Positions 3,022 to 20,405 of a stretch of 64,000 nucleotides of DNA are shown one piece after another. The first letter of the stretch is position 1, and each line of letters begins with the position of its first letter. This DNA comes from Piromyces finnis finn (Eukaryota > Fungi > Neocallimastigomycota): contig MCFH01000057.1 of the NCBI GenBank assembly GCA_002104945.1, forward strand, positions 248,001 through 312,000. Direction: 5' to 3'. The position numbers were made by a program, and so were the translations under genes. The notes beneath the pieces are model-generated. The model had not been told where the DNA came from. It was given only the letters and a program-made list of their open reading frames with translations, and did not search any database.

Positions 3022-5036
3022 ATGGGTGTATGTCATAGTAAAGGTAATGTGTACCCAAGTACACAAGAAGAAAAAGAAACTAATTCTATTATCAATAAGC
3101 AAATTCAGGAAGAAGCAAAAATAAAAGAAAAAAATGATAATTGTACATATAAAGTATTACTGTTAGGTACTATTAACAAGTTTCAAATATAATAATTATT
3201 ATTTATATGTAATGATTATTAACTAAAAATTAAAAATATTAAAATTTAAATAAAAATATAAAAGGTCCTGCAGATTCAGGAAAGGTATAATGAAATGAAA
3301 ATATTTATTAATAATTTAATAACAATAAAATATAATATAAAAAGGAATTACTATAATTTATAATATATAATGATTTAATTTTAAAATATCATACAAAATA
3401 TATATGTGTTTACATTGAATTTCTTATTACAGTCAACTTTCTTAAAGCAACTTCGTATTATTAATAAAATGCCATTAGAGGAATGTGATATTGAAAACGC
3501 AAAATATACATGTATTTCAAATTTATTATTATCAATGAAATTAATATGCCAAAATTTAGATTCTCTAAATATAAGTTACAATGAAGGAAATAAAGTAATT
3601 AAGTATTAAATTAAAAAATGAATTATATAAAAAAACTTCATATATTTATGTTATTATTCAATAACAAATATTGTTTTATATTATTTATATATAAATAAAT
3701 AAAAAATAAACAATTTTAATCATCAGAAATATATTTCAGTTGTTTTGAATAAAGTTGACACCACACTGTCAGAATATAAAGAAAAAAAGTATTATTTGAT
3801 TTATAAATTTTTAAAATAATAATTCTTATTAAAAAAAAAAAAAAAAAAAAAAAGAATTACAAAGATATTAAAAAATATTAAAATATAAAATAAAAGAATA
3901 ATTCCTGAAGATTTAATGGAAGCTTGTAAAAAACTATATAATGAAGAAGGTGCTATAAAAGAATGTTTGAAAGTTGGAAATCAAATTAACGTATTAGATT
4001 CAGCTGAATAGTAATTATAAACAAATTATAAAATAATTATTATAATATATATTATAAGATTAATAATTAATACTTTTACATATTTTATTGAAAGTTTCAT
4101 GAATAAAATGGATAATCTCTTTGATCCTAATTATGTAACAACAAACGATGATATATTACATCAAAGATCACCAACTCAACAAATCTCTGAAACAACAATT
4201 CCAATTCATGGATCTAATGATAGATTAAGGTAAAATAAAAATAATAATTAGCCTTTTAAGAAACATTTATAATTCCTTAATTATATAATCATTATAAATT
4301 ATTTATTAATAATTAAATTAATGAAAAAATATTAATTGTTGGATATTAATATATTGTTCATTTACGTTTAAAGTGTATATGATTTTGGTGGATCAAGATC
4401 ACAAAGATTAAAATGGGCAGCTTTCTTCGATAATGTAGATCTTATGATATATATTTTTGCTATAAGTGCATATGATCAAGTAAATAATGAAAATATAATA
4501 ATAATAAAGCTATACCTTTTTAAATTAAAAAAATATATAAATTATAATAATATTATTTATTTTTAATAAATAAAAATAGAATTTATTAGAAGATCCAACT
4601 GTAAACAGATTAAAAGATGCAGAACAACTGTTTAAACAATTATCAAGAAATAAAATTCTATGGCACAAAAATATTGTTATTTTCTTTAATAAAATAGATA
4701 TATTTAAGAAAAAACTCAGCATTTCTCCAGTATCAAAATATTATCCAGATTATAATGGTAATATAAAAATAAAATTTAATTTTTCATATTTTTGTATGTT
4801 ATCTATTAATAATAATATATATACATATATAAAAAATTTTAAAAAAAGGTGGTAATGATTATGCAGAGGCTGCTACATATTTTGCTAAAAAGTTTATTAA
4901 ATTAAATGCTAATAAAAATAGAACAGTATCAACACATTTAACATGGGCAACAGATACTAGACATTGTTCAACAATTATAAAATTAACAATTCAATCACTT
5001 CAACAATATGCACTTTCATCTGCTGGTTTATCATAA
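3022..5036 (+). CDS. Heterotrimeric G-protein alpha subunit, atypical (predicted GTPase-impaired). Exons 3022-3166, 3265-3284, 3433-3594, 3727-3788, 3897-4010, 4095-4229, 4374-4479, 4580-4757, 4849-5036
   Basis: N-terminus MGVCHS (myristoylation G2, palmitoylation C4). G1 LLLGPADSGKSTFLKQLRII, G2 DILHQRSPT, G3 YDFGGSRSQRLKW, G4 FFNKID, G5 TWATD. All introns are GT-AG and in frame. Confidence 0.93.

Positions 5037-5718: not shown

Positions 5719-20405
<14,687 letters not shown>

What the first reader, a model, noticed from the sequence alone, without database searches (positions are those of the whole stretch)
3022..5036. G-alpha naturally lacking the catalytic Gln and both RGS-critical glycines
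Seen in sequence: switch II reads DFGGSRSQR instead of DVGGQRSER, so the catalytic Gln (Gai1 Q204) is Ser (TCA 4393-4395). The P-loop is GPADSGKST instead of GAGESGKST (G42 to Ala, 3270-3272). Switch I is RSPTQQI instead of RVKTTGI (G183 to Gln, 4180-4182). R178, T181, GKS, NKxD, TxATD and the lipidation signals are kept, and the gene is intact over nine exons. Established knowledge: Q204 substitutions abolish efficient GTP hydrolysis, G183S makes G-alpha RGS-insensitive, and G42 substitutions impair hydrolysis and RGS binding. Inference: this may be a membrane-anchored, GTP-binding but hydrolysis-poor, RGS-independent G-alpha switched by another mechanism, perhaps in zoospore or carbohydrate sensing. 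Gut fungi are reported to have expanded GPCR repertoires.
Basis: partly seen in the sequence, partly recalled or inferred. Interest (0 to 1): 0.78.

Follow-up and report, generated by a model that had tools for sequence, protein, structure and literature searches.

The report
Gut-fungus G-alpha without catalytic glutamine
This gut fungus (Piromyces finnis) has an intact, expressed and evolutionarily conserved G-protein alpha subunit whose key GTP-splitting glutamine is a serine, so it probably switches off very slowly or by an unusual route, but no one has measured this.

Summary
A nine-exon GT-AG gene at 3022-5036 encodes a 369-aa G-alpha. It is 100% identical to the annotated Piromyces finnis protein ORX42988.1. 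Ungapped alignments to solved G-alphas put Ser at Gln204, Ala at Gly42 and Gln at Gly183. Arg178, Thr181, GKS, DxxG, NKxD and the MGxC..S lipidation motif are kept.

It is neither an assembly error nor a pseudogene:
- Orthologues in Piromyces sp. E2, Anaeromyces robustus and Neocallimastix (two copies), and in transcript-size contigs, carry the same GPADSGKST / RxPTQ(Q/R)I / DFGGSR motifs and the same TCA codon.
- Pairwise dN/dS is 0.10-0.21.
- The switch regions are the best conserved parts.
- An AlphaFold model (pLDDT 88) matches activated Gi (TM 0.94).

Only Gln204Ser, with Thr182Gln and Val201Phe, is specific to this clade. Ala42 and the lost Gly183 are shared with three other anaerobic-fungus G-alpha clades; two of these keep Gln and one has His. 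Gln is also replaced in G-alphas of other zoosporic fungi and some basidiomycetes.

Slow GTP hydrolysis that RGS proteins cannot speed up is a reasonable inference, not a result. The zoospore or carbohydrate-sensing idea has no support here. The gene is known; the feature appears undescribed. Interest is moderate.

The parts
3022..3166 (+). Exon 1: start codon, MGVCHSK lipidation motif (Gly2, Cys4, Ser6), N-terminal helix, beta-1 (KVLLLG)
   Evidence: The N-terminal motif MG[VIL]C.SK is kept in all orthologues.
3265..3284 (+). Exon 2: 20-nt micro-exon encoding the P-loop core (G)PADSGK. Ala51 (GCA 3270-3272) is at the Gi-alpha-1 Gly42 position.
   Evidence: A micro-exon of the same length is present in four other genomes.
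3433..3594 (+). Exon 3: rest of the P-loop (ST), alpha-1, start of the helical domain
   Evidence: Pfam G-alpha on this piece.
3727..3788 (+). Exon 4: helical domain
   Evidence: exon length conserved.
3897..4010 (+). Exon 5: helical domain (includes the LDSAEYF nucleotide-contact motif)
4095..4229 (+). Exon 6: linker 2 and switch I, RSPTQQI (4165-4185). Arg192 (=R178) and Thr195 (=T181) are kept. Pro194 (=K180), Gln196 (=T182) and Gln197 (=G183, CAA 4180-4182) are substituted.
   Evidence: Ungapped alignment to Gi-alpha-1.
4374..4479 (+). Exon 7: beta-3 and switch II, DFGGSRSQR (4381-4407). Ser220 (TCA 4393-4395) is at the catalytic Gln204 position; Phe217 (=V201) and Gln223 (=E207) also differ. 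This exon is split 43+63 nt by an extra intron in the other four genomes.
4580..4757 (+). Exon 8: alpha-3, beta-5, NKID guanine-specificity motif (4688-4699)
   Evidence: Pfam G-alpha 58.5 bits on this piece alone.
4849..5036 (+). Exon 9: alpha-4, beta-6, TWATD (4941-4955; TCAT motif with Cys to Trp), alpha-5 ending ...QQYALSSAGLS, stop TAA 5034-5036

Best explanation
The gene encodes a genuine, expressed, selectively maintained G-protein alpha subunit. It belongs to a paralogue clade, called here the Ser clade, found here only in anaerobic gut fungi (Neocallimastigomycota). The clade arose by duplication inside a G-alpha family of zoosporic fungi and diverged fast on its stem branch. It has since been held constant, most strictly in the P-loop, switch I, switch II and the beta6-alpha5 region.

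Shown: the fold, all nucleotide- and Mg-binding motifs, the arginine finger and the dual-lipidation motif are intact. The catalytic Gln is Ser in every member.

Inferred from mutant studies of Gi-alpha-1, Gs-alpha, yeast Gpa1 and Ras:
- The protein binds GTP at the membrane but hydrolyses it far more slowly than a canonical G-alpha.
- RGS proteins only stabilise the Gln/Arg transition state and supply no catalytic residue, and Thr182, Gly183 and Glu207 in their contact surface are also changed. A classical RGS domain therefore cannot speed hydrolysis up.
- The active state is then long-lived (a latch rather than a timer). Output would be limited by synthesis, turnover, lipid cycling, sequestration or an unconventional GAP, as in Rnd/RhoE-type or Rap-type small GTPases.
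For: - Gene model and identity to the public annotation.
- Full-length G-alpha domain.
- AlphaFold2 model with pLDDT 87.9 and pTM 0.82, with Ras-like plus helical domains. It superposes on activated Gi-alpha at TM 0.94, rmsd 1.7-1.8 A.
- Ser at the Gln204 position, Ala at Gly42 and Gln at Gly183, by ungapped alignment.
- Same residues in Piromyces sp. E2, Anaeromyces robustus, two Neocallimastix paralogues and more than ten transcript-size contigs.
- Identical TCA codon in five genomic copies, and dN/dS 0.10-0.21 at dS 0.45-0.98.
- Invariant sites are 82-86% in the P-loop, switch I, switch II and beta6-alpha5, against 53% in the helical domain.
- Clade-specific replacements of otherwise more than 80% conserved residues: three of the seven sit at the catalytic and RGS face (T182Q, V201F, Q204S).
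- Stem branch of 1.1 changes per site followed by short crown branches.
- Expression: four runs from three studies hold 0.41 of the sampled 31-mers. The expectation for a fully spliced mRNA is 0.428. The orthologue P0001 is an uninterrupted 1110-nt ORF on 1.4-1.6 kb contigs in four runs.
- The switch-I Gly-to-Ser 'RGS insensitivity' mutation is described in PMC9283941. The G42V and K180P Gi-alpha-1 mutant structures 1AS0 and 1SVK/1SVS are among the closest structural matches.
Against: - No biochemical measurement exists.
- GTPases that lack the Gln can still hydrolyse by other means, for example His in translation factors, trans-acting Asn in RapGAP, or K+-dependent HAS-GTPases (own knowledge).
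- The arginine finger and Thr181 remain invariant, which would be less necessary if hydrolysis had been given up entirely.
- The clade gained an invariant Gln at position 182, next to the Mg-binding Thr.
- Earlier notes of this scan (not tested here) report many divergent 7TM-RGS genes in this genome, one pair with changed G-alpha contact residues. A co-evolved RGS partner is therefore possible.
- The protein evolves about ten times faster than its Gln-bearing paralogues: 79-84% against 97-99% identity between the same genera. Constraint is real but weaker.
Confidence: 0.6

Rival explanations
1. The protein still cycles at a useful rate by using a different catalytic arrangement. Candidates are the clade-invariant Gln196 (=T182) or Gln197 in switch I, Ser220 itself positioning the water, or a partner that inserts a catalytic residue in trans (Rap/RapGAP style). 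On this reading it is a normal timer switch with rewired chemistry.
For: - Arg192 and Thr195 are invariant.
- T182Q is invariant in the clade and nearly absent elsewhere (1 of 170).
- The switch regions are the most constrained parts.
- A sister clade has His at the same site, the catalytic residue of translational GTPases (own knowledge).
- RGS-domain genes are reported as numerous in this genome (untested).
Against: - In Gi-alpha/RGS4 complexes Thr182 points outward into the RGS pocket, not at the gamma-phosphate (own knowledge). Model coordinates could not be measured here.
- Position 197 is Arg in Anaeromyces, so it is not a fixed catalytic residue.
- No G-alpha is known to use such a mechanism.
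Confidence: 0.2
2. The protein is a nucleotide-state-insensitive pseudo-switch. It would act as a membrane scaffold or a sink for G-beta-gamma, receptors or RGS domains, with signalling independent of GTP turnover (comparable to what is proposed for plant extra-large G proteins).
For: - The alpha-5 C-terminus differs from the canonical receptor-coupling motif (…YALSSAGLS against …NLKDCGLF).
- Tyr320 and Cys325 equivalents are replaced.
- Evolution is faster than in the paralogues.
Against: - All five guanine-nucleotide motifs, the Mg ligands and the Arg finger are kept under purifying selection. This is hard to explain if nucleotide binding did not matter.
- Trp227 (=W211) and Lys226 of switch II are kept.
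Confidence: 0.1
3. The Ser codon or the gene is an artefact: an assembly or sequencing error, or a decaying pseudogene.
For: None found.
Against: - The same codon and motifs occur in five independent genome assemblies and many cDNA-size contigs.
- The nine-exon ORF is intact and equals the public annotation.
- dN/dS is 0.10-0.21.
- The share of 31-mers in four probable RNA runs fits a spliced mRNA.
Confidence: 0.01

Closest known systems
Canonical Gi/Gt-class G-alpha subunits (e.g. Gi-alpha-1, transducin)
   Same: Same two-domain fold (TM 0.94, rmsd about 1.8 A to activated Gi). About 30% identity over the full length. P-loop GKS, Arg finger, Mg-binding Thr, DxxG, NKxD and N-terminal myristoylation/palmitoylation-type motif are shared.
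   Different: Gln204 is Ser, Gly42 Ala, Lys180 Pro, Thr182 Gln, Gly183 Gln, Val201 Phe and Glu207 Gln. TCAT is TWAT. The C-terminus ends in polar ...SAGLS instead of ...CGLF.
Engineered or disease mutants Gi-alpha-1 Q204L, G42V, K180P, G183S (yeast Gpa1 G302S)
   Same: The natural protein carries substitutions at all four of these positions at once. 1AS0 (G42V) and 1SVK/1SVS (K180P) are among its best structural matches. The Gly-to-Ser RGS-insensitivity mutation is described in PMC9283941.
   Different: The actual residues differ (Ser, Ala, Pro, Gln), and their kinetic effect has not been measured. Here they are fixed by selection in a clade, not introduced in the laboratory.
Other anaerobic-fungus G-alpha paralogues (P0157/P0200 'alpha-1', P0158/P0212 'subunit B', P0224 'alpha o')
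   Same: Same zoosporic-fungus G-alpha family on the tree. They share Pro41-Ala42 in the P-loop, a non-Gly residue at position 183 and TWATD.
   Different: Two of them keep the catalytic Gln and are 97-99% identical between genera. One has His. Only this clade has Ser204, Gln182 and Phe201, and it evolves about ten times faster.
Rnd/RhoE, RhoH and kappaB-Ras type small GTPases (naturally GTPase-deficient)
   Same: Natural substitutions at the Ras Gly12 and Gln61 equivalents; proteins thought to stay GTP-bound and to be controlled by expression, lipidation or turnover (own knowledge). This is the working model proposed here.
   Different: A different GTPase family with no helical domain and no built-in Arg finger. 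The analogy is one of mechanism, not membership.
Rap1 with RapGAP or plexin GAP
   Same: Rap1 is a switch that lacks the catalytic Gln (Thr61) and relies on a GAP to supply a catalytic residue in trans (PMC3787391 listed; own knowledge).
   Different: No such GAP is known for any G-alpha. RGS domains do not supply a catalytic residue.
[quoted passage not shown]
   Same: These are atypical G-alpha signalling systems in which deactivation, not receptor-driven exchange, is the regulated step (PMC9283941). 7TM-RGS genes are reported in this genome by earlier scan notes (untested).
   Different: There is no XLG-type N-terminal extension (369 aa). The self-activating G-alphas characterised so far keep the catalytic Gln and respond to RGS.

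Membership tests
Heterotrimeric G-protein alpha subunit (Pfam PF00503) | Full-length match to the G-alpha profile above the curated cut-off | tested here: met
   287.3 bits against a cut-off of 48.8; residues 19-353 cover profile positions 2-328 of 333.
Heterotrimeric G-protein alpha subunit (Pfam PF00503) | Ras-like GTPase domain with an inserted all-helical domain | tested here: met
   AlphaFold2 model with pLDDT 87.9. Foldseek TM 0.94 and rmsd 1.7-1.8 A to Gi-alpha and transducin structures.
Heterotrimeric G-protein alpha subunit (Pfam PF00503) | G1 P-loop GxxxxGK[ST], G2 RxxT (Arg finger and Mg-binding Thr), G3 DxxG, G4 NKxD, G5 TCAT | tested here: met
   GPADSGKST, RSPT, DFGG, NKID and TWAT (Cys to Trp) are present and conserved in the clade.
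Heterotrimeric G-protein alpha subunit (Pfam PF00503) | Catalytic Gln directly after DxxG (Gi-alpha-1 Gln204) | tested here: not met
   Ser220 by ungapped alignment. It is Ser in all 24 clade sequences. This is a catalytic feature rather than a family-defining one: 14 of 106 non-redundant G-alphas in the sample lack it.
Heterotrimeric G-protein alpha subunit (Pfam PF00503) | Binding of G-beta-gamma and coupling to 7TM receptors | not testable with these tools
   Switch II Lys226 and Trp227 are kept, while the C-terminal alpha-5 tail is divergent. No partner data.
G-alpha groups shared by Dikarya, Mucoromycota and animals | Clusters on a tree with the Dikarya, Mucoromycota or metazoan G-alphas sampled | tested here: not met
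   It falls in a separate 19-row clade made only of Neocallimastigomycota, Gaertneriomyces and Paraphysoderma sequences (support 96/90). The fungal group I-III labels of the reference rows were not checked.
RGS-regulated G-alpha | Switch I Thr182-Gly183 and switch II Gln204, Ser206, Glu207, Lys210 contact set | tested here: not met
   Four of these are changed: T182Q, G183Q, Q204S and E207Q. Actual RGS binding was not tested.
Naturally GTPase-deficient switches (Rnd/RhoE type; mechanism class, not homology family) | Substitution of the Ras Gly12 and Gln61 equivalents together with intact nucleotide binding | tested here: met
   Ala51 and Ser220, with intact G1-G5 motifs.
Naturally GTPase-deficient switches (Rnd/RhoE type; mechanism class, not homology family) | Measured lack of GTP hydrolysis | not testable with these tools
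   Needs recombinant protein.
Plant-type extra-large G protein (XLG) | Long N-terminal extension with a Cys-rich region before the G-alpha domain | tested here: not met
   The protein is 369 aa and the G-alpha profile starts at residue 19.

The most novel reading that the evidence does not exclude
The Ser clade is a latch-type G-alpha. Once loaded with GTP it cannot be reset by hydrolysis. The numerous divergent RGS-domain proteins reported in this genome would then bind it not as GAPs but as effectors or sequestering partners, for example 7TM-RGS receptors or an RGS-RhoGEF. Alternatively, catalysis has been moved to the clade-invariant switch-I Gln196, so that hydrolysis needs a specific trigger. 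Either reading would mean that a whole zoosporic-fungus G-alpha family, in which Gln204 has been replaced by Ser, His, Lys, Ala or Leu in several lineages, runs a G-protein cycle without the canonical Gln-dependent off-step.
Probability: 0.12. Interest if true: 0.8.

Novelty: new variant of a known kind. Interest (0 to 1): 0.55.

Why it matters
Textbook G-alpha signalling is timed by Gln204-dependent GTP hydrolysis and its acceleration by RGS proteins. This is a G-alpha clade that has kept everything needed to bind GTP and sit on the membrane, has replaced the catalytic Gln and much of the RGS contact surface, and is still under purifying selection in several genera. That makes it a natural experiment on how a heterotrimeric G protein can work without the usual off-switch.

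The wider pattern found here enlarges the question. Repeated replacement of the Gln in G-alphas of chytrids, blastoclads, anaerobic fungi and some basidiomycetes suggests this is a family habit rather than a single oddity. A 2025 review of fungal G proteins does not mention these lineages.

The question is directly testable with recombinant protein. For anaerobic fungi, which have large and unusual GPCR repertoires (PMC5168858), it bears on how plant-biomass signals are transduced.

Tried and rejected
Orthologue conservation and the 31-mer share were used instead.
Exon references exclude them. Only local scripts on the closed machine touched the whole window file (a tblastn of my own model against the window, and intron GC content).
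- Word search with single exons was not possible because of the length window. The one exhaustive HMMER job was therefore run with exon 8. It returned the orthologue P0001 and, through it, the exact protein P0181.
- The long 'two-stretch' hits P0003-P0010 turned out to be tandem or merged G-alpha gene models and are irrelevant.
- A second G-alpha gene in the window: none.
- Whether anaerobic fungi also have a fully canonical G-alpha (Gly42, Gly183, Gln204): none labelled as Neocallimastigomycota appeared among the listed hits. Many canonical hits carry no taxon. One candidate, P0251, lies on a compact, intron-free, AT-rich contig unlike these fungi. The question stays open.
- Test of correlated loss of Gln204 with Gly42 or Gly183: raw counts are striking (14/14 and 12/14). 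There are only about five independent changes, so the result is not significant.
- Literature searches for a description of Gln-less fungal G-alphas, or of G-alphas in anaerobic fungi, found none. This covers open-access text only and does not prove absence.
- Pseudogene or assembly error: rejected.
- Functional link to the neighbouring dynein gene: synteny is conserved, but the genes are tail-to-tail, so this is not taken as evidence of function.
Full report
**What is in the sequence.**
The region lies in extremely AT-rich DNA: about 26% GC in the exons and 9% in the introns. Joining nine exons, all with GT-AG borders, gives a 1110-nt open reading frame of 369 codons. The exons are 3022-3166, 3265-3284, 3433-3594, 3727-3788, 3897-4010, 4095-4229, 4374-4479, 4580-4757 and 4849-5036.

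The individual exon translations already hit Pfam G-alpha. An exhaustive HMMER search with exon 8 returned a 369-aa relative, P0001. The cluster look-up then gave P0181 = ORX42988.1 / A0A1Y1UXK0, 'guanine nucleotide binding protein, alpha subunit [Piromyces finnis]'. P0181 is 369/369 identical to my spliced model.

**The residues.**
Ungapped HMMER alignments to solved G-alphas place the three substitutions as follows:
- Ser220 (TCA 4393-4395) under the catalytic Gln of DVGGQ.
- RSPTQQI under RV(K/P)TTGI of switch I.
- GPADSGKST under GAGESGKST.

A 354-aa transducin-2 sequence in my alignment carries G40, R178 and D200 at the Gi-alpha-1 numbers, so the equivalences are Gly42 to Ala, Lys180 to Pro, Thr182 to Gln, Gly183 to Gln, Val201 to Phe, Gln204 to Ser and Glu207 to Gln.

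Arg178, Thr181, the GKS(T) Mg/phosphate residues, Asp200, NKxD and T(W)ATD are kept. The N-terminus MGVCHSK has Gly2, Cys4 and Ser6, the usual myristoylation/palmitoylation pattern, and this is conserved in all orthologues. The full protein scores 287 bits on Pfam G-alpha. An AlphaFold2 model built from a 117-sequence alignment has pLDDT 87.9 and pTM 0.82, with the Ras-like and helical domains.

**It is neither an error nor a pseudogene.**
The word search with P0001 and the cluster look-ups found the same protein type in several places:
- Piromyces sp. E2 (90% identical).
- Anaeromyces robustus (79%).
- Neocallimastix californiae/lanati, in two paralogues (84% and 79%).
- Several unnamed JGI/Logan sequences (83-88%).

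All 24 sequences have GPADSGKST, RxPTQ(Q/R)I and DFGGSR.

I fetched the genomic loci of four orthologues and spliced them exactly to their proteins. Exon lengths are conserved (145, 20, 162/165, 62, 114, 135, 43+63, 178, 188). P. finnis has lost the intron that splits the switch-II exon in the others. Pairwise Nei-Gojobori dN/dS is 0.10-0.21 with dS 0.45-0.98, and the Ser codon is TCA in all five copies.

Among the five orthologues, the fraction of invariant sites is 82-86% in the P-loop, switch I, switch II and beta6-alpha5 segments. It is 53% in the helical domain. The unusual switch sequences are thus the most constrained part of the protein.

**Expression.**
Four runs from three studies hold 0.41 of the sampled 31-mers of the gene. 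The fraction of 31-mers lying wholly inside exons is 0.428, which is what a fully spliced mRNA would give. The tool only guesses that these runs are RNA. The orthologue P0001 occurs as an uninterrupted 1110-nt ORF on 1.4-1.6 kb contigs in at least four runs, which is cDNA-like.

**Where it sits in the family.**
A profile search and two maximum-likelihood trees give the following:
- The Ser clade groups with three other anaerobic-fungus G-alpha clades and a Gaertneriomyces sequence (support 92/95).
- Paraphysoderma (Blastocladiomycota) sequences come next (96/90).
- All of these are separate from the clade that holds the sampled Dikarya, Mucoromycota, Glomeromycota, Chytriomyces and animal G-alphas.
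- Monophyly of the four anaerobic-fungus clades is not rejected (AU p = 0.45).
- The Ser clade has the longest stem (1.1 changes per site) and short crown branches.

The three sister clades are:
- P0157/P0200, with GPAESGKST, RIVTTEI and DVGGQ.
- P0158/P0212, with GPAEAGKST, RIMTTQV and DVGGQ.
- P0224, with GPADAGKST, RNMTTKI and DVGGH.

Ala at Gly42 and the loss of Gly183 therefore predate the Ser clade and are shared by Gln-bearing paralogues. GPADSGKST also occurs in Gln-bearing nematode G-alphas. What is specific to the Ser clade, at positions that are at least 80% conserved elsewhere, is T182Q, V201F, Q204S, I253L, F287Y, Y320S and V339T. Between the same genera the Ser clade is 79-84% identical, while the two Gln-bearing paralogues are 97-99% identical. 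Constraint is real but clearly weaker.

**Loss of the Gln is recurrent.**
In my sample the catalytic position is:
- Lys, His and His in three Paraphysoderma proteins.
- Ala in Blastocladiella and in Gaertneriomyces.
- Leu in Homolaphlyctis and in Globomyces.
- Ser in Sistotremastrum, and Ala in Amylostereum.

Among 106 representatives below 80% identity, 14 lack Gln204. All 14 also lack Gly42 and 12 lack Gly183. Of the 92 that keep Gln204, 74 keep both glycines. This reflects only about five independent changes on the tree, so no statistical claim can be made.

**How it most likely works.**
- Shown: a G-alpha that is intact in fold and in nucleotide binding, carries a lipidation motif, is conserved and is very probably expressed, with Ser at the catalytic Gln.
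- Established knowledge (own knowledge unless cited): the Gln orients the attacking water. Its replacement in Gi-alpha, Gs-alpha and Ras lowers kcat by one to two orders of magnitude or more. Substitutions at the Gly42/Ras Gly12 position impair hydrolysis. The switch-I Gly-to-Ser change makes G-alphas insensitive to RGS (PMC9283941). RGS domains supply no catalytic residue.
- Inference: the Ser clade binds GTP and hydrolyses it very slowly, and classical RGS GAP action cannot rescue this. The active state is long-lived and is limited by something other than the built-in timer. Rnd/RhoE-type small GTPases are the closest mechanistic analogy.

I put about 0.6 on this. The main rival, at about 0.2, is that hydrolysis persists through a rewired mechanism. 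The points in its favour are the invariant Arg finger and Thr181, the new invariant Gln at 182, the His in a sister clade, and the many divergent 7TM-RGS genes and the RGS-RhoGEF reported for this genome by earlier notes of this scan (not tested by me). A nucleotide-independent scaffold (about 0.1) fits poorly with the conserved G1-G5 motifs. An artefact or pseudogene is excluded.

The expanded, mostly class C GPCR repertoire of these fungi is documented: 34 GPCRs in P. finnis (PMC5168858). I found nothing that links this G-alpha to zoospores or to carbohydrate sensing. The only contextual oddity is a conserved tail-to-tail neighbour, a dynein heavy chain gene. It is present in the window and beside all four orthologues. 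I do not treat this as functional evidence.

**Novelty.**
The gene is annotated in public databases, and so are its orthologues. In nine full-text searches I found no paper describing G-alphas of anaerobic fungi, or Gln-less fungal G-alphas. A 2025 review of fungal G proteins mentions neither chytrids nor Neocallimastigomycota nor the glutamine. Subscription literature was not searched. I classify the finding as a new variant of a known kind: a conserved G-alpha clade, within a broader zoosporic-fungus family, that lacks the canonical off-switch residue. Interest is moderate (0.55). It is a clean, testable natural experiment, but the functional claim rests entirely on inference, and two of the three features advertised are lineage-wide rather than special.

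Noticed in passing
window 5719-13231 and beyond, minus strand; L001-L006 downstream of the G-alpha gene: A dynein heavy chain gene (Pfam Dynein_C, AAA_8, AAA_9, MT stalk) lies tail-to-tail about 0.7 kb downstream of the G-alpha gene. The same arrangement is kept in Piromyces sp. E2, Anaeromyces robustus and at both Neocallimastix paralogues.
   Followed up: partly
window 4374-4479 (exon 7) against L001-L006: P. finnis has lost an intron. The 106-nt switch-II exon is split into 43 + 63 nt by an extra intron in the four other genomes; all other exon lengths are conserved.
   Followed up: yes
window 3265-3284: A 20-nt micro-exon encodes just the P-loop core PADSGK. It is conserved in length in all five genomes.
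   Followed up: yes
P0224 cluster (Neocallimastix californiae/lanati ORY40308.1 and relatives): A second anaerobic-fungus G-alpha clade has His at the catalytic Gln position (DVGGHKNLR), together with Ala42 and Lys183. His is the catalytic residue at this position in translational GTPases.
   Followed up: partly
P0011, P0014, P0022, P0029, P0077, P0142, P0148, P0169, P0287: G-alphas of Paraphysoderma, Homolaphlyctis, Globomyces, Gaertneriomyces, Blastocladiella, Sistotremastrum and Amylostereum also lack the catalytic Gln (Lys, Leu, His, Ala or Ser). In a non-redundant sample, all 14 Gln-less proteins also lack Gly42.
   Followed up: partly
   Followed up: no
window 3830-3856 (intron 4): A run of about 25 A interrupts intron 4. 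It is typical low-complexity sequence for this genome, and intron GC is only 9%.
   Followed up: no
P0003-P0010 (hits): Several database 'proteins' of 460-870 aa with two G-alpha matches are tandem G-alpha genes merged into one gene model, or true tandem fusions, in unnamed organisms.
   Followed up: partly
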